The notes below the pieces were generated by a model, which was not told the origin of the DNA, made no database searches, and saw only the letters and a program-made list of their open reading frames with translations. Below, piece by piece: positions 26,091 through 34,672 of a DNA stretch of 64,000 bases. Numbering within the stretch: the first letter of the stretch is position 1; every line of letters starts with the position of its first letter. The DNA is from Dimorphilus gyrociliatus (taxonomy: Eukaryota; Animalia; Annelida), in the NCBI GenBank assembly GCA_904063045.1, contig CAJFCJ010000002.1, positions 3,467,891-3,531,890 on the forward strand, in the 5' to 3' direction. Position numbers and translations under genes: made by a program.

Positions 26091-27540
26091 ATGATTACAG
26101 TTACACTAATAATAAAATTAACTTTTTCTCTCATAACCTTTTCAACTATTGAGAAACCTTATGTATCTTCAGCTACAAATATAATTCATATGGACTTACT
26201 TAACGATAATTCGACATTTTCTCTAAAAACTGAACAAGCAGACCACAAATTATGGTTCGATGTAAGTATTAATAAATTCAATAGTGTTATAAACTATCTT
26301 AACTCCTTATTTGCTTTTTCATTTAAAGATAAAAGGAAATTTTGTATCTGTTATTTTGTATTCAAGTTGTTATATTGCAACTGAAGATAGTATACAATTT
26401 GCAACAGTTTTACTTATTCGAACATACTCAATGACCAATTTACTTTCCTGCAAAGCAAAATTAACTTCATTAAATTTTTATAACACGAAAGGAATAGTAT
26501 TTATCTTTTCAACTGAAGTTACTAACAATAATATATATAGTTGGATTTATACAACATTTTCTGATAAAGCTATAGCATGGAATCACTTAGATTCAACTCT
26601 ATACTATTTAGCTATACCAAGTCCTAAAACTGTTTCAATATTCTGGGAAAAAAGCAGATTAGATTCTATTAAGAAAATTAAATACTTCGGCACTTTTGTT
26701 GATCAAGATAATACTTATCAAAGCTGTCTCAAGGATGACAAATTGTATATACAAGAAGATGGGCGGTTCTTTCCAATAAGGAACAGCAATTCTGATTATA
26801 TACAAGTGAGATTTCCTTCAAACAAGTATCGCTTTGACTTGATGATGTTTTTTGCTTATGCTGACTCATATCAAAAGAGGTCAATTAAGGCAGAAATGTC
26901 TCACACTCTTACAGTTTGTACTATAACTTATTCAATATATACTTCAAAAAAATACTTCTGGTATGGAATGGATTGTACTGATGAAGGTTTTGAGACAGTG
27001 AAAATCTCTTCTGCAAACTCGCTCGAAATAACTTTTAGAGAAATTGAGTTCTTTGATTTCAATACTCCGATAGAAACAACAACAATATTAGAGACAACAA
27101 CTCCAGAGGAAACAACAACAGTATTAGAGACAACAACTCCAGAAGAAACAACAAAAGCCCTGGATACAACATCGGTAATAGAGACAACAACTCTAGAAGA
27201 AACAACAACAGTATTAGAGACAACGACTCCGGAAGAAATAACAACAGAACGGGGCACAACTGAAGAAATTACGACAACTTCTCAAACTTCTCAATCATAT
27301 TATTTCAAGGTTATCGTTGAAAAAACTTTGAATCTTTTAATCACAAATACTATATTAAATAATACGAATTTTAACAACTGTTATAATGCTTGTAACAATA
27401 ATTGTAGTGCTTTCTCATACGATTTTTTGATGAAAAGGTGTGTGCTAAATTTCTCACCAAACAATCCTACCAATACTTATTGTGAGAGTGGTTCTCTGTT
27501 TCTAAGAGTTTACTTGAACCAGATCGAAATTCATTGCTAA
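26091..27540 (+). CDS. Secreted protein: signal peptide, ~290 aa unassigned region, Thr/Glu mucin-like stalk, C-terminal PAN domain; 2 exons (26091-26261, 26329-27540)
   Basis: MITVTLIIKLTFSLITFS signal-like start. Phase-0 intron gtaagt...tttaaag joins both track ORFs. ETTT repeats, then CYNACNNNCSAFSYDFLMKRCVL. Confidence 0.75.
27073..27279 (+). repeat. Coding minisatellite, 18/36-bp units encoding ETTT[IV]LETTTPE
   Basis: Repeated gaaacaacaacagtattagagacaacaactcc units in frame. Confidence 0.9.
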
Positions 27541-28228
27541 AACAAATATAGCTTAAGCAAAATTTTTTCTAGACGTATTCTTCAATTTAAGAATTAAATT
27601 GCTTCATTTGTATACCTTTTTTTAAAAGTTATTAAGTTTCTTATATAAAGTTTTAATAAATATCATACTTGTATAGGAGAGGTTGATACATTTCGATGTG
27701 ACTTTTATGTTTCTTTCTTAATTGTTCAAGATAGCTGAAATGCTTTTGTAGGGTATACTCAGCCATCTAAAGATAGGATATTTAATTATGGGGTATAATG
27801 CGTTTTATAGCAGAATATTACAAATAAACATTTACAGATTCTAATACTGTAATTCATCCTTTCGGAAAACCTTTACTGTTGATTCAGTTATCGTTTTGTA
27901 TGAATATTATTAATCCCGGCCTCTTTCCCCAGCAACGATCCCCTTTAAGTTGTTTATTCAAATAAACATCGTACAATTTGATAAATTTCGTTTTATGAAA
28001 AAGTTTATTTGTAAAGATAGCTTGTATCATATCATTTTTATATATAGTAGTATATAAATATAAACTTTCTTATAAATCACTGACGAATCGTCATGTGAAC
28101 TACTTTCAGGACCCTAACAATAGCTCTTTTGCATATCAATGTCCATATTAGTCATACACCTTAAATAAAACGCAAACCACTTCAAACCAAAGGACAGTCT
28201 TAGCTCCACCTGAACTCCAGCTCTCAAA

Positions 28229-31200
28229 ATGATTATTAAAACTATAATATTTTGCAGTTTGCTACAATTGGCAACCTCTTTTCCAGCAGTGTCTGAAGAT
28301 TTTACTCATTCCTTGATATTAAAAGCACCAGATATTTATAAAGTTTTCTGGAAGTATAATGAGACACACATTACTTTCGAGGTTCAAGTAAAAACTAAAG
28401 GTTGGATTGGTTTTGGAATCTCACCTAACGGAGGAATGCGAGGATCCGATATTGTAATTGGATGGGTAAAGGATGGCAAAACTAGCTTTACAGTCAGTTA
28501 ATACTTCTAATTCAAATTGATAAATAATAGTAATTAATTAGTATGCATTCTAGGATAGACATGCAACAGGAAATACAGTTCCTGTAATCGATAAAAGTCA
28601 AGATTGGACGTTGCTTATGGGAAAAGAGACCCCAGAATATACTGTTTTTAAATTTACAAGATTGCAAAAAAACTGTGACCTAGAAGACCGAACTATTACG
28701 GTTTGTTGTATTCTAATTTTGTTCGCTATTTAAACAAAGTTCTTTTGGTATTTTTAATAATTTCATTTAAAGACTGTAATATTTAAAACACATCTGTTCT
28801 AAACTATGTATTAAATAAACCTATTTAAGATTTCCAATGTTTCTTTTTTAAGGAAGGCACATCAAGACTGATCTGGTCTTATAATGACAATGATCCAGAG
28901 TCTGACACACCTACATACCATGGCGCATCTAATAGAGGAGTTCATAGCACTCAATTGATATCTACAGCCCCTGTGAAAAATAGACAAGAGATATTAAAAG
29001 ATGCTTTTCCCATCGAAATCGTTATGAATAAAGTTAGTAGTTAATATTAGACTGCATATCATTAATTAGTATTTTTTTTTATTTAGAACAACATACCAAA
29101 TTATAGCGATACTCAATATAAATGTGCTATATTCAGTATGCTTAATAGCACAGAAAAACATCATATTATTATGGTATTATATGATATTAAATATCTTCTT
29201 CAAAAATAAACTGCATTAACTAATGTTAAAAAAATAGATGGAGCCTATAATTCAAAAGGGAAATGAAGATTATGTTCATCATTTTATTCTCTCTGGTTGC
29301 AATGCAGATGCTCTTACTGATGAAGATGTTGGAGAAGCTTATAACTGTTACGAAGACGACGAGAGAATAAAGAAACAAAAATGTTCAAATATAATAACTG
29401 GATGGGCTGTTGGTGGTCAGGTACATAAACAAACTAAACACTTTCAAATAGGTTTTAAAACTTCTTTTCTTCATCAATAAAGGAATTTTACTTTCCTGAT
29501 GAAGTTGGGTTTCCAATAAGCAACGATCAGGCTAAAAATTATGTGCAATTGGAAGTGCACTATGATAACCCAAAGTTACGCTCTGGTATTGTTGATAGTT
29601 CTGGAATAAGGTTATGGGTAACGAAAAAATTGAGAAAATACGATTCTAACATCATTGAAGCAGGGCATATTGTTAAACATAGTCAAATTATACCTCCATA
29701 TGCAGAAAATTTTGTGTCCGTTGGCCATTGTCCCAAAGAATGCATTACAGAAGTAAATTTATTACTCTCTTATCATAGAATTTTTAATATCTTTTTAAAA
29801 AATAGGCATTTACTAAGGACAATTTGGAAGAAGTTAATGTATTTGCAGTATTTTTACACTCTCACTTAAAAGGCGTCGGGATAAAAATTAGACATTTTAG
29901 AAATGATATAGAATTGGAGCCAATGGCTTATGATGATAGTTATGACTTCAATTTTCAAGAGATAAGAAATTTAAAACAAATTCGTAAGATTAAAAAGGTG
30001 AGTTTCGAATGTAAACAATTTGATTTAGTCAATTATACAGATAAAGAATAACTTATTATATTCTATTAAAAGGGAGATCAACTTACAGTTGAGTGTACAT
30101 ACAATACTCTATCGGAAACTAAACCTGTTTACGTATGTTTCTTATTTTGATGATTAGAGCAAATTCAGTTTGAACATTCTTTTATATGTTTTAGGGAGGA
30201 TTAAGAACCAGAGATGAAATGTGTCTTGCTTTTATCCTATATTATCCCAAATCTTCTTTATCAATATGTTTAACGGAACCTAAGCGTAAAGTACTTGCGT
30301 TCTTTAAAAGAGATTTAGATTTTGAGGATGTAGATTGGAAGAATCGTAATATTAGAGATGCTTTTCAATCGGTAGTAAAGTTACCGGAAGTTACTGCTGC
30401 TTGCGTAATCAAAAATCAAACAGTAATGACATTTTCAAAACTATCAAACTATTTGTACAAATTTTATGTCCTTAGATTAAGATTTGGAGCTACAAATTTC
30501 AAGAAGCTAAACAAATCTACGAAAAAAATGATACATGTCCTACACCGGAGACAACCCAAGCTCCAACACCAGCTCTACCACCATATGTTATTTTAGAATT
30601 TCCAAGACCATCTGAAATTTTCAATCATGAAATTGTATTGAAAGCTCCTGATGTTTACAAATTATTCTGGAAATACGACGATAAAAAGATTACTTTTGAG
30701 ATTATGGTTAAAACTAAGGGTTGGGTTGGATTTGGTCTATCGCCTAATGGAGGTATGAAAGATAGCGATGTTGTTATTGGCTGGGTGAAAGCAGGAAAAG
30801 TCTCCTTTGAGGTAAATTCTATATTAAACGTTAAGCTATATTATCATATAATAAAATAGTATTATTTATCTGTGCACGGTTATTAGGATAGGCATGCTGT
30901 TGGAAATTCGGAGCCACGACTTGACAAAAGCCAGGATTGGAGGTTATTATCTGGTCAAGAAAAAGAACATTATACTATTTTGAAATTCGAAAGAAATTTA
31001 CGCACCTGCGATCCTCAAGACAGGGACATAAATGTATTATTTCATATTGTCGTAATAGTGTAATATAAGAAAAACAAATTTTCAGGATGAAACAACCAGA
31101 TTAATTTGGTCATATAACATTGAAGATCCTAAAGATGGTTCACCAGCTTATCACGGAGTATATAACAAAGGAACAAAGAGTCTCCAATTGATAGCCACAC

Positions 31201-32798
31201 CCAAACCAAAAAATCGGGAAGAATTTCTAAAAAATGCATTCCCTGTTGACATATTAAATTCTAATGTAGTTAATAATTTTTAATAAGTAACTTAATTTCA
31301 TTAATTTCTTTATTAACAGTATACAATGCCCATTACTAAAGATACTAGCTACTATTGCGAAGTGTTTAAAATACCACCGCTTAAACAGAAACATCATGTT
31401 ATAGCCGTAAGACTTTTATGTTAATTATTTTTAAAAGAATCTTATGCCTAATGATGATAAATTCAGGCGGAAGCAATTATTGACAAAAAGAATATAGACG
31501 TATTACATCACATAATCATCTACGGCTGTGAAACAAGTAAACTGAAAGACGAACATGTTGGAACATCTTGGGACTGTTTTGATTATGAAATAAATATGGG
31601 CCCTCCGACAACAAGTTGTAGAACTGTGATGTTTGCTTGGGCTGTTGGTGGAGAGGTTTGCTTAATATTAGTTTTAAATTTTACTTAAAGACATTACATT
31701 TCAGATTGACTTTTATCCTGAAAATGTAGGATTTCCTCTCGGTGGAGATAACGACCCTGTTTATGTAAAAATGGAAACACATTACGATAATCCTGGTTAT
31801 AGAAAAGATATTGTTGACTCTTCTGGCTTAAGACTTTGGGTTACGAAAGATCTTAGAAAATATGATTTTAATATTATGCAGATGGGTCATATCGTTACAC
31901 CATTCCAAGTTGTTCCTCCTCATGAAAAAAAATTTAAAACAGTCGGTTATTGTCCTGAGCAATGCTCAAGTCAGGTATGTATTAGTATCCATTAAGTACA
32001 TGTATTAAATAATAATACTTGTGGAATAGGCTTTTGAAAAAGATAATTTGGAGGAAATTAATATATTTGCTATTCTCCTTCATTCTCATTTAAAAGGAGT
32101 AGCATTGAAAGTCAGACATTTCCGAGATGACATAGAACTAAAGCCTTTGGTGGAAGACAAAACGTATGACTTCAATTTACAAGAATATCGTCCTTTCAAA
32201 AAGATTAAAAAGTTTAAAAAGGGAGATAGACTAATGCTGGAGTGTATTTACAATACTCTTGATGAAGAAAAACCAGTCCTGGTATGTCATTGTTTTTGTA
32301 ACTATGTACCATAGTATATCATTTATTTCTCTTTTGTGAAGGGTGGCCTTTCAAGTAAAGAGGAAATGTGTTTGGCTTTTGTAATGTATTATCCAAGATT
32401 GTCAATTTCAAGATGTGAAACTATGCCTGATCCTGGAATATTGGGACAAATAAATAAATGGGGTAAAGAAGAGGTTGACTGGTCTGATAAATCCAAACGA
32501 AACAAGTATCAAATCCTCGTCGAAACGAATACAGTTAGAGTATCCTGCGCCGGGCACGGAATTGATTATAAAGTGAGATTTAAATCATAAACAATATATA
32601 ATAGTACTTAAAATTTAAACTACAAATTTTTTACAGATTGATCCACAGCCGATAACATTATCACTTCCAAAATCTCTCTACAAGCCTTTCGAGGAGAAAT
32701 GCTCTAAAACTACAACCACCGATTCTGCTTCAAGAAATGCAAGCACTAATCTAAGTAAAGCAGTAATCATTTTTCTATTGATGAAAAACTTTTTCTAA
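28229..32798 (+). CDS. MOXD1: Tandem double DBH-like (MOXD1-type) copper monooxygenase: signal-[DOMON-Cu2 N-Cu2 C]x2-GPI-like tail, ~18 exons, ~1150 aa
   Basis: Unit 1: GWIGFGISPNGGM, VHHFIL, EVHYDNP, LHSHL, DEMCLAF. Unit 2: GWVGFGLSPNGGM, LHHIII, ETHYDNP, LHSHL, EEMCLAF. Intron 30423-30475 (phase 0) leads into one open exon 30476-30811 carrying the end of unit 1, a Pro/Thr linker and DOMON 2. The last exon 32637-32798 ends SRNASTNLSKAVIIFLLMKNFF*. Confidence 0.88.
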
Positions 32799-34672
32799 AA
32801 ATTTTAACCTTAAGTTTTCTACGTCTTAAGACTCAATTCTGTTTAAGTTAATCATATATTCGACTAAAATATTTCTTTAGACATAGATAATAAATATCTT
32901 GAGACAATATTGACACAAAAAAATATTAAAACAAATTTTACGGGTATATTTAACAATCATATGACTCTCATTCCCAATTGACTCATAAAACACAAGTGAA
33001 ATATGTAAATTGAATCTTCATTACTATTCAAGCTATTAGAATTTAGTAAAAAACATAATAAACCTTTTATATTTAGGTTAATTTTGGTAATAAAAAAAAG
33101 TATAAGAATGAGTTTCCCCTAAAAATTTCACCCTATGCATCTCCCTTTTTGAAGTATTATATAAAAGTTAAATAGGACAATATGTGCAACAATAATTTAA
33201 ATGAACCTTATCTTCAATCTACGTCATCATATCTTCATATAAAATACAGATTATAAAAATAAATTACAATAAGGTGGTCAATTTACTTTAACTTATAAGT
33301 AAATTCTATTTAAACTATACAGAATACATCGATTTGGCTTTCAATGTCTAGTAACAATAGAAAATCTATGCTCGTTTGTAATGATATCTTTCATTTGTCA
33401 AAAGGTGAAAACAAGTATCAATTCGATGAAAACATAGCAAAAAAAGACAAAAAGTGAATAATAAAAACCTTATTCAGTAAGGTAAAACAAAGCAAGAGTA
33501 TTTTAGCTGAGGAAGTATTTTATAACATAAATATTTCATTCGTTGCATAAAGAACTAATCCAAAAAACTTCAATGCAAAACAAGAAAAGCATTACTGCTT
33601 TGTTCATCAACGTTTAAATGATTATAAGTCCCATTGAAATTTCTAAAGGGAATAGGTGGGCTTTTTCTTTTGTTTTTAATAGAAGATTATTTATAAATAG
33701 GAATATATAGTTGAATGTATTTTTAAGTTTAGTTGCAACGAATGGTAAACAGATATAAAGTCGCTTATATTTGAATATTTAAATAATTAATACGACTTTA
33801 GTTAAGAGTGAAATAATAATAGAAATTAAAAGTTAGTTAAAAATAAAGAATGACTAGAAAAATATAGTAAGAGAATACTTTGGATACGTTATATAAAAAT
33901 TCAATTATATTTGACTAGTTTACAACAGCATAATAGTTTATCTAGTAGTTTCTTCTAATAAGGTCATTATCAATCCCTTTTAACAACTTGTATAAACTTA
34001 AATATATTGAGCAAAGAAACATAGCTGATTCAATGATAAATAAGAAAATAGAATTATTAGTATGTTGATGAAATATTTATTCACTATATCTTTAGAAATT
34101 GTAAAATTATTTATAAAACTATGAAACTGTAGAAAAGACTTATTGTTTTTTTTCCATAGCAACTAATCAACAATTTCAAAAATCTTTTAGCTTTTCCTTT
34201 TTCTTCGAAATTTATGTTTGCCACACGCAAACAAACATTTAAAAGACTCATTGTACTGGTTAATAATGATCACAGGTTGAATTTTGCACACATATATTAA
34301 ACATAGCTCTATCTAACGTAATCGTTTATTTTCGTTCATAGTTTTTTCTTCTTTAAAAATCTTTTGACAAAATTAAATATTTTAAAACTGTTTTTTTGAT
34401 ATGAACGCTGAGAATTGTGAACAGATTTCTTTTTCATCTAGTTTTAGACGAATTCGCCATTTTTGAATTATAAACAGGACAGTTTGTAACAAATAATAAT
34501 TTTCTATTAATATGATAAGAATATGAGAAAATAGTAAAATTCAAATAGTAATTGGCAAAAGAATTTGAAGGATTAAACACTCTATCTATCCTCGTGTAAT
34601 TAAATATTTTAACAATTTCCTTTCAAATAAAAGGAGGCAGAAAACTGAACTGAAAAAATTCGCAATATATCT

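What the first reader, a model, noticed from the sequence alone, without database searches (positions are those of the whole stretch)
28229..32798. A single polypeptide containing two complete, catalytically intact DBH/MOXD1 monooxygenases
Seen: after the 53-nt intron 30423-30475 the frame reads IKIWSYKFQEAKQIYEKNDTCPTPETTQAPTPALPPYVILEFPRPSEIFNHEIVLKAPDVYKLFW, with no stop and no second signal peptide, running into DOMON 2. There is one signal peptide at the start and one GPI-like tail at the end. Both units keep all CuH (HH, H) and CuM (HxH, M) ligands, yet are clearly diverged, so this is not an assembly duplication. Established: DBH-family enzymes normally have one unit per chain and act as dimers/tetramers. 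Inference: a covalent pseudo-heterodimer that could do two sequential hydroxylations or fix an asymmetric dimer on the cell surface.
Basis: partly seen in the sequence, partly recalled or inferred. Interest (0 to 1): 0.85.

Follow-up and report, generated by a model that had tools for sequence, protein, structure and literature searches.

The report
Two-headed copper monooxygenase in an annelid
A tiny marine worm (Dimorphilus gyrociliatus) really does make one long protein from two complete, apparently active copies of a dopamine-beta-hydroxylase-like copper enzyme. The same doubling is conserved in a related species and recurs in oysters and other organisms, but it sits unremarked in public databases, so it is a real and modestly interesting variant, not a unique oddity.

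Summary
Window 28229-32798 (+) holds an 18-exon gene. All 17 introns are phase 0, GT..AG, 49-152 nt. It encodes 1154 aa: signal peptide, DOMON-CuH-CuM unit 1, a 20-aa Pro/Thr linker, unit 2, and a short hydrophobic tail.

- **Transcript:** one spliced 3450-nt contig from a public run spans 28192-32746 with all introns removed, including 30423-30475.
- **Units:** they share 53% identity, and all six Cu ligands in each align to those of human DBH (4ZEL).
- **Source:** the window is Dimorphilus gyrociliatus. The public model DgyrCDS1700 already contains this fused ORF, with a probably false N-terminal extension.
- **Conservation:** a syntenic ortholog in a related species (59% identity) keeps the same exons, fusion exon and ligands, with synonymous sites saturated.
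- **Paralog:** DgyrCDS3617 is also doubled, apparently by a separate event. The scan noted doubled monooxygenases on another piece of this genome (s1-080720).
- **Other organisms:** clean doubles with transcript support occur in oysters, Rhodelphis and unidentified organisms. About half of the database "doubles" keep an internal Met plus signal peptide and look like merged neighbouring genes.
- **Literature:** I found no description of the architecture.

The pseudo-heterodimer and sequential-hydroxylation ideas remain untested. AlphaFold2 gives two good DBH-like modules, a disordered linker and no confident packing between the units.

The parts
28192..28228 (+). 5' UTR as far as the transcript contig reaches
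   Evidence: The X2 contig starts at 28192 and is continuous into exon 1. It shows no joint to the upstream ORF that the public annotation merges in.
28229..28279 (+). Start codon and signal peptide (MIIKTIIFCSLLQLATS), the only N-terminal-type hydrophobic segment
   Evidence: Hydropathy scan. The ortholog also starts with Met plus a hydrophobic leader followed by FPAVSEDF.
28229..30422 (+). Unit 1 (DOMON, CuH, CuM), exons 1-9: 28229-28492, 28554-28700, 28853-29032, 29087-29173, 29238-29420, 29483-29752, 29806-29997, 30073-30132, 30195-30422
   Evidence: GT..AG phase-0 model. Every joint is present in the spliced contig. Pfam domains. Alignment to 4ZEL, E 9.5e-69.
29277..29282 (+). Unit 1 CuH ligands HH. 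The third CuH His is at 29558-29560, the CuM HxH at 29857-29859 and 29863-29865, and the CuM Met at 30219-30221.
   Evidence: These align to vHHm, evHy, lHtHl and eeMc of human DBH. Ligand table.
30423..30475 (+). The 53-nt phase-0 intron that joins unit 1 to the fusion exon
   Evidence: Joint 30422->30476, GT..AG, 228 letters on the shorter side, in the X2 contig. The same intron position occurs in the ortholog.
30476..30538 (+). First part of the fusion exon: tail region of unit 1 (IKIWSYKFQEAKQIYEKNDTC). It corresponds to the start of the last exon of unit 2 (IDPQ...KPFEEKC) and ends at the conserved Cys.
   Evidence: Read directly from the two translations. The Cys column is shared by most doubled proteins. 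In DBH the C-terminal Cys596 bonds to Cys154 of the DOMON domain (PMC4846438). Equating that Cys with this one is my inference, because the alignments to 4ZEL stop before this region.
30539..30598 (+). Pro/Thr-rich linker of 20 residues (PTPETTQAPTPALPPYVILE), with no Met, no hydrophobic segment and no dibasic site
   Evidence: AlphaFold2 pLDDT is below 50 over model residues 542-560. The fusion exon is exactly 336 nt in the ortholog too.
30599..32572 (+). Unit 2 (DOMON, CuH, CuM). It starts at FPRPSE, which aligns with the mature N-terminus FPAVSE of unit 1. Exons: 30599-30811 (rest of the fusion exon), 30887-31033, 31086-31265, 31320-31406, 31467-31655, 31705-31974, 32030-32281, 32342-32572.
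   Evidence: Alignment to 4ZEL, E 9.1e-75.
31506..31511 (+). Unit 2 CuH ligands HH. The third CuH His is at 31780-31782, the CuM HxH at 32081-32083 and 32087-32089, and the CuM Met at 32366-32368.
   Evidence: Alignment to human DBH. These columns are invariant in 16 doubled proteins.
32637..32798 (+). Last exon: tail region of unit 2, a Ser/Thr/Asn-rich stretch, a short hydrophobic C-terminus (KAVIIFLLMKNFF, 32757-32795) and the stop codon (32796-32798)
   Evidence: The ortholog ends in a comparable short hydrophobic tail, TVFLFSYFTIKYYF. The contig covers this exon only to 32746.

Best explanation
This is a genuine single-chain, two-headed copper monooxygenase of the MOXD1-like branch of the DBH/PHM family, in the annelid Dimorphilus gyrociliatus. 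It arose by tandem gene duplication followed by an in-frame deletion. The deletion removed exactly the parts that are normally cut off or used for anchoring: the hydrophobic C-terminal tail of the upstream copy, the intergenic DNA, and the start codon and signal peptide of the downstream copy. What remains is mature unit 1 through its last conserved Cys, a 20-residue Pro/Thr linker, and mature unit 2. There is one signal peptide at the front and one hydrophobic tail at the back. These steps are shown by the sequence, the transcript contig and the ortholog. The rest is inferred. The protein enters the secretory pathway, and each unit binds two coppers and carries out an ascorbate-dependent hydroxylation. 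The two heads sit on a flexible, probably O-glycosylated tether and stay in fixed 1:1 stoichiometry. They have diverged (53% identity; unit 2 evolves more slowly), so they may differ in substrate or role. Whether they pack as an intrachain dimer is open.
For: The 18-exon phase-0 model has no stop. One spliced 3450-nt contig at depth 127 covers 28192-32746 with all introns removed, including 30423-30475. Both halves carry the Pfam domains. Both halves align to human DBH with all six ligands, and the fold matches 4ZEL with TM 0.79-0.81 normalised to the target. The unit-to-unit alignment starts at FPAVSE/FPRPSE, right after the signal peptide, and the first part of the fusion exon matches the tail exon of unit 2. 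Only two hydrophobic segments exist, at the two ends. The public protein DgyrCDS1700 is 100% identical over model residues 10-1140. The orthologous locus L001 is syntenic on both flanks and 59% identical. It has the same exon structure, including the extra intron in unit 1, a fusion exon of the same 336 nt, and all ligands. Synonymous sites are saturated, while dN is 0.34 for unit 1 and 0.21 for unit 2. In the tree, u1 pairs with u1 and u2 with u2 between the two species, with support 98 and 100. The linker is predicted disordered, and both modules are confidently folded.
Against: The transcript evidence is an assembled contig from a run of unrecorded library type, not raw or long reads. It cannot show transcript ends or minor isoforms, and it stops 52 nt before the stop codon. 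No protein-level evidence exists. Activity, copper binding, secretion and anchoring are all inferred. AlphaFold2 gives pTM 0.51, so the relation between the heads is unknown. The substrate of any MOXD is unknown (PMC10244343).
Confidence: 0.85

Rival explanations
1. Two adjacent tandem genes are wrongly read as one. Unit 1 and unit 2 would be translated separately, and the apparent continuity would be an artefact of gene prediction or contig assembly.
For: This does happen in the family. About half of the doubled database models (Mytilus, Haliotis, Physella, Trichoplax sp. H2, Eriocheir, Anneissia) keep a Met plus a signal-peptide-like hydrophobic stretch between the units. Contigs cannot prove a single molecule (note).
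Against: Here there is no in-frame Met and no hydrophobic stretch between the units. The linker and DOMON 2 lie in one exon, which is spliced to the last catalytic exon of unit 1 in the contig. The junction, its frame and its length are conserved in an ortholog whose synonymous sites are saturated. Unit 2 would have no way into the secretory pathway on its own.
Confidence: 0.04
2. The fused chain is real, but only one head is an enzyme. The other would serve as a structural or regulatory partner (a pseudo-enzyme), as in many fused duplicates.
For: Unit 1 evolves faster than unit 2 (dN 0.34 against 0.21). In other predicted doubles, unit 1 has lost ligands: Physella has lost all six, and Trichoplax and Anneissia have lost part of the HH pair.
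Against: Both units of this gene, of its ortholog and of the paralog DgyrCDS3617 keep all six ligands. The examples that lost ligands are mostly models with an internal signal peptide, so probably separate genes.
Confidence: 0.1
3. The fused chain is a precursor that is cleaved in the linker after translation, releasing a soluble unit 1 and a tail-bearing unit 2.
For: The linker is exposed and predicted disordered. Nothing tested here excludes proteolysis.
Against: The linker of the window gene and of the ortholog has no dibasic or RXXR site. In the paralog DgyrCDS3617 and its ortholog, only three residues separate the conserved Cys from the FPxPSE start of unit 2 (DGF / DRF), leaving almost no room for a processing site.
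Confidence: 0.06

Closest known systems
Human dopamine beta-hydroxylase (PDB 4ZEL)
   Same: Each unit has the same domain order (DOMON, CuH, CuM, then a C-terminal region that returns to the DOMON domain) and the same six copper ligands. The sequence E-values are 1e-69 and 1e-75, and the fold TM-score is about 0.8.
   Different: DBH has one unit per chain. It forms an asymmetric dimer through a C-terminal helical dimerization domain with intermolecular disulfides (PMC4846438). Here two diverged units are joined covalently head to tail. The sequence alignments stop before the DBH dimerization domain, and I saw no CxC motif.
MOXD1 / 'DBH-like monooxygenase protein 1' (orphan single-unit enzymes of animals)
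   Same: These are the nearest named single-unit relatives, at 40-44% identity to either unit (Bulinus, Sinonovacula, Ptychodera). In the tree both units fall among lophotrochozoan MOXD1-like proteins. They share the N-terminal signal and the C-terminal hydrophobic end.
   Different: They have a single unit. The substrate is unknown for the whole group (PMC10244343).
DgyrCDS3617 of the same genome and its ortholog P0270 (a cDNA-size contig)
   Same: The same doubled architecture, with one signal peptide and all twelve ligands.
   Different: Only about 44% identical. Almost no linker: three residues (DGF / DRF) between the conserved Cys and the FPxPSE start of unit 2. Its two units group together beside unit 2 of this gene. 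A tree that holds all unit 1 sequences of this group together is rejected (p-AU 1.5e-5), which points to a separate doubling or to gene conversion.
Doubled predicted proteins of oysters (Ostrea edulis XP_056009644, Saccostrea echinata, and the cDNA-size contig protein P0155)
   Same: A clean mature-to-mature junction without an internal signal peptide, all ligands in both units, and a Ser/Thr/Pro-rich linker of about 30 residues. The unit 1 and unit 2 clades are shared between two oyster sequences.
   Different: Independent origin: the oyster units group with mollusc single-unit proteins, not with the annelid units. They are named only 'uncharacterized protein'.

Membership tests
Copper type II ascorbate-dependent monooxygenases (DBH / MOXD / PHM) | Cu2_monooxygen N-terminal domain (PF01082) with the CuH ligands HH...H | tested here: met
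   Pfam hits on exons of both units are above the curated cut-off. HH and H align to the DBH ligands in both units.
Copper type II ascorbate-dependent monooxygenases (DBH / MOXD / PHM) | Cu2_monoox_C domain (PF03712) with the CuM ligands HxH...M | tested here: met
   Pfam hits in both units. HSH and M align to HTH and M of DBH.
Copper type II ascorbate-dependent monooxygenases (DBH / MOXD / PHM) | PHM/DBH catalytic fold | tested here: met
   The AlphaFold2 model has mean pLDDT 80.9. Foldseek's best matches are 4ZEL chains, E 1e-43, TM 0.79-0.81 normalised to the target, followed by PHM structures.
Copper type II ascorbate-dependent monooxygenases (DBH / MOXD / PHM) | Copper binding and ascorbate-dependent hydroxylase activity | not testable with these tools
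   Needs recombinant protein, metal analysis and an assay. No substrate is known for MOXD-type enzymes.
DBH-like subfamily (DBH, TBH, MOXD1/2) as opposed to PHM | N-terminal DOMON domain (PF03351) in front of the catalytic core | tested here: met
   DOMON hits at 28229-28492 (E 7.7e-15) and 30476-30811 (E 3.5e-15).
MOXD1-like clade rather than true DBH/TBH | Phylogenetic placement with MOXD1 orthologs | tested here: inconclusive
   The nearest named proteins are 'DBH-like monooxygenase protein 1', and the units sit among lophotrochozoan MOXD1-like sequences next to vertebrate MOXD1. The tree held no verified DBH or TBH sequences, so exclusion from that clade was not tested.
DBH proper | C-terminal helical dimerization domain with the Cys528/Cys530 intermolecular disulfides | tested here: not met
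   The alignments to 4ZEL end at chain residues 467 and 487, before that domain. No CxC motif is visible in the region after CuM of either unit. The model shows only two short helices there.
GPI-anchored surface proteins | N-terminal signal peptide, plus a C-terminal omega site, spacer and hydrophobic tail | tested here: inconclusive
   Hydropathy shows a leader at residues 1-17 and a short hydrophobic end at 1138-1154. A similar end occurs in the ortholog. The hydrophobic run is only about 8-12 residues, I had no GPI predictor, and the public annotation splices this end differently.

The most novel reading that the evidence does not exclude
Covalent doubling of MOXD-type copper monooxygenases has evolved independently several times: twice in dinophilid annelids, in oysters, in Rhodelphis, and in at least one unidentified organism. 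Each time both catalytic sites were kept. That would mean these orphan enzymes work as obligate pairs, with the kind of functional asymmetry seen in the crystal of the DBH dimer. The natural single-chain forms, whose two halves have diverged, would then be ready-made tools to ask whether the two active sites of a pair do different jobs (half-of-sites behaviour, or two different substrates).
Probability: 0.25. Interest if true: 0.6.

Novelty: new variant of a known kind. Interest (0 to 1): 0.45.

Why it matters
DBH-family enzymes are textbook one-unit chains, and the MOXD branch has no known substrate. A doubled form that is expressed, conserved under selection and recurs in separate lineages suggests that pairing of two catalytic units matters for this branch. 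It also offers a natural single-chain heterodimer in which each active site can be mutated on its own. There is a practical lesson for annotation as well: doubled DBH-like models in databases are a mix of real fusions and merged tandem neighbours. An internal Met plus signal peptide tells the two apart.

Tried and rejected
- **Representative search:** the search with the fusion exon did not return the window's own protein, because the library holds only 50%-identity representatives. Its top hits were multi-DOMON proteins unrelated to the question. It did give the ortholog's exon (P0006) and the first doubled models.
- **Literature:**, plus reading PMC10244343, found no description of doubled DBH/MOXD proteins. 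One search failed on a term that was too long.
- **Pfam on the upstream ORF:** no family matched that ORF or the extra N-terminus of DgyrCDS1700.
- **Structure:** AlphaFold2 of the mature chain on a 16-row alignment gave good modules but pTM 0.51. The tool returns no PAE or contacts, so the intrachain-dimer idea could not be tested.
- **dN/dS:** no ratio could be given because synonymous sites are saturated. Only dN is reported.
- **Rejected, assembly duplication:** the units are 53% identical.
- **Rejected, intron retention to the stop at 30596 as the main form:** the contig is spliced there.
- **Rejected, one ancient doubling shared with molluscs or arthropods:** in the tree, units pair within lineages.
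- **Rejected, all database doubles being real:** several keep internal signal peptides.
Full report
**What is in the sequence.**
Reading 28100-33100 and assembling exons by GT..AG sites gives an 18-exon gene on the + strand from 28229 to 32798. All 17 introns are phase 0 and 49-152 nt long, and the open frame is 1154 codons.

Scanned exon by exon, Pfam finds DOMON, Cu2_monooxygen and Cu2_monoox_C once in 28229-30422 and once again in 30476-32572. The two halves align over 513 positions at 52.6% identity.

That alignment begins at FPAVSEDF in unit 1, directly after the leader MIIKTIIFCSLLQLATS, and at FPRPSEIF in unit 2. The first 21 residues of the fusion exon (IKIWSY...KNDTC) correspond to the start of the last exon of unit 2 (IDPQ...EEKC). 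So the join runs from the mature end of unit 1 to the mature start of unit 2, through 20 Pro/Thr-rich residues.

A hydropathy scan finds hydrophobic segments only at residues 1-17 and 1138-1154. The linker has no in-frame Met and no dibasic site.

**Is it one transcript?**
One search for public runs gave two, and both were laid on 27900-33200.

Run X2 (coded organism A, 2017, library type not recorded) holds a single contig of 3450 nt at word depth 127. It covers 28192-32746 with every intron removed at the modelled sites. That includes the joint 30422->30476, which has 228 letters on its shorter side. A spliced contig must come from RNA.

This is strong support for a continuous mRNA, with limits. 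It is an assembly, it cannot show ends or rare isoforms, and it stops 52 nt before the stop codon. Run X1, a coral metatranscriptome, holds only short fragments about 1% different. One of them keeps intron 31656-31704, so it adds nothing.

**Whose gene is it?**
The fused ORF is therefore already in the public annotation.

That annotation differs from my model in two ways. It adds 278 N-terminal residues from the upstream ORF (26311-27540) by splicing into the signal-peptide codons. It also removes 32755-32814 at the 3' end. The contig starts at 28192 and shows no such 5' joint, and the ortholog has its own Met and leader, so I take the N-terminal extension to be a merge of two genes. The 3' end stays open.

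**Conservation.**
The representative search with the fusion exon returned P0006, a 111-aa ORF that matches the linker as well as DOMON 2. Its contig L001 (9117 nt) carries a co-linear gene. The same exon structure can be fitted exon by exon, including the extra intron that unit 1 has and unit 2 lacks. The fusion exon is exactly 336 nt there too. There is a leader only at the front, a short hydrophobic end only at the back, and all twelve ligands are kept. The one difference is that the intron before the last exon is absent.

Both flanks of L001 match the window's flanks, so this is the orthologous locus in another, unnamed species. It is neither DgyrCDS3617 (40% identity) nor this gene itself (59%).

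Between the two species, synonymous differences are saturated (pS 0.75-0.81). dN is 0.34 for unit 1 and 0.21 for unit 2, and it is higher in the leader, linker and tails. Both units and the frame across the join have thus been kept under selection for a long time.

**Family and fold.**
Each unit aligns to human DBH (4ZEL) with E 9.5e-69 and 9.1e-75. HH, H, HxH and M sit on the DBH copper ligands. The alignments end before the DBH dimerization domain.

AlphaFold2 on a 16-row alignment of doubled proteins gave mean pLDDT 80.9 and pTM 0.51, with pLDDT below 50 for the linker (model residues 542-560). Foldseek puts 4ZEL first (TM 0.79-0.81 normalised to the target) and PHM structures next. The model therefore shows two well-folded DBH-like modules and a floppy tether. 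It says nothing reliable about contact between them.

**How common is the doubling?**
Pfam on long hits showed two copies of each of the three domains in models from Ostrea edulis, Eriocheir sinensis, Rhodelphis limneticus (a Trinity transcript), Anneissia japonica and Tegillarca granosa.

Two further searches added:
- **Molluscs:** Saccostrea, Crassostrea, Mytilus, Haliotis, Physella and Pinctada.
- **Crustaceans:** Homarus, Penaeus and Procambarus.
- **Other animals:** Trichoplax sp. H2 and Ciona.
- **This genome:** the paralog DgyrCDS3617.
- **cDNA-size contigs:** three contigs whose ORFs fill them (P0155, P0165, P0270; for P0270).
- **Four-unit models:** one each in Ostrea edulis and Penaeus japonicus.

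Looking at the stretch between the units separates two classes. Mytilus, Haliotis, Physella, Trichoplax, Eriocheir and Anneissia keep a Met followed by a signal-peptide-like run there. These are probably neighbouring genes merged by prediction. DgyrCDS1700, DgyrCDS3617, P0270, the oysters, Pinctada, P0165, Penaeus chinensis and Rhodelphis have a clean junction.

All clean cases keep all twelve ligands. Physella unit 1 has lost all six.

**One origin or many?**
I cut the doubled proteins into units and built a tree with single-unit relatives (55 rows, quick IQ-TREE). In most lineages the two units of a protein are each other's closest relatives.

Among the annelid sequences, u1 of this gene pairs with u1 of L001 (support 98) and u2 with u2 (100), so this fusion predates the split of the two species. 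The two units of DgyrCDS3617 and P0270 group together beside u2.

A tree that forces all four annelid u1 sequences together is worse by 39.8 log-likelihood units (p-AU 1.5e-5). I named that group after seeing the tree. This points to several independent doublings, two of them in this family. Gene conversion between units cannot be excluded.

**What is known.**
Full-text searches found no paper that describes doubled DBH/MOXD proteins. A recent survey of monoamine enzymes states that MOXDs are not functionally characterised, and it does not contain the words tandem, fused or DOMON (PMC10244343).

The DBH crystal paper shows an asymmetric dimer held by a C-terminal helical domain with intermolecular disulfides. 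In that structure the chain's last strand and Cys596 are tied back to the DOMON domain (PMC4846438). By inference, this may explain why the fusion kept unit 1 through its last conserved Cys.

The scan's notes list doubled DOMON-copper monooxygenases on another piece of this genome (s1-080720). That fits DgyrCDS3617, though I did not check that it is the same locus.

**Verdict.**

My best reading is a secreted or membrane-held enzyme with two independently folded, probably both active heads on a flexible tether, kept together by selection. It is a new variant of a known family, not a new kind of system. It is already present, unremarked, in public annotation.

The recurrence of clean fusions is the most interesting part. 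The mixture with merged gene models in databases is a practical caution. I left out no step as being of the referred kind.

Noticed in passing
window 26311-28255: The public model DgyrCDS1700 joins the upstream ORF (Thr-rich TTTPEETTTVLE repeats, no Pfam match) to this gene by splicing into the signal-peptide codons, which adds 278 residues. The transcript contig starts at 28192 without that joint, and the ortholog has its own Met and leader, so this is probably two genes merged by annotation. The upstream ORF is conserved next to the ortholog.
   Followed up: partly
window 32755-32814: The public annotation removes a 60-nt GT..AG intron inside my last exon, replacing the hydrophobic end SKAVIIFLLMKNFF with IFYVLRLNSV. 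The transcript contig ends at 32746, 8 nt before that donor, so the reads do not decide. If both forms exist, they might give tailed and tail-less isoforms.
   Followed up: partly
window 29998-30072 compared with 32030-32281: Unit 1 has one more intron than unit 2: exons 7 and 8 of unit 1 correspond to a single exon in unit 2. The ortholog L001 shows the same difference, so this intron gain or loss happened after the duplication but before the two species split.
   Followed up: yes
proteins P0158, P0159, P0163, P0271, P0019, P0016: These doubled database models (Mytilus trossulus, Haliotis cracherodii, Physella acuta, Trichoplax sp. H2, Eriocheir sinensis, Anneissia japonica) carry a Met followed by a signal-peptide-like hydrophobic run between the two units. 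They are likely tandem neighbours merged by gene prediction.
   Followed up: partly
protein P0163 (Physella acuta), first unit: All six copper ligands are replaced in the first unit (RQ, K, S.N, K), while the second unit is intact. This is a likely pseudo-enzyme copy next to an active one.
   Followed up: no
proteins P0267 (Ostrea edulis, 2310 aa) and P0268 (Penaeus japonicus, 2475 aa): These predicted proteins have four DOMON-monooxygenase units in a row. I did not check whether they are real or merged tandem arrays.
   Followed up: no
run X1 laid on window 29481-29753 and 31626-31975: A coral metatranscriptome holds fragments about 99% identical to this gene, one of them with an intron retained. 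The worm or a very close relative (or its DNA) was therefore in that coral sample.
   Followed up: no
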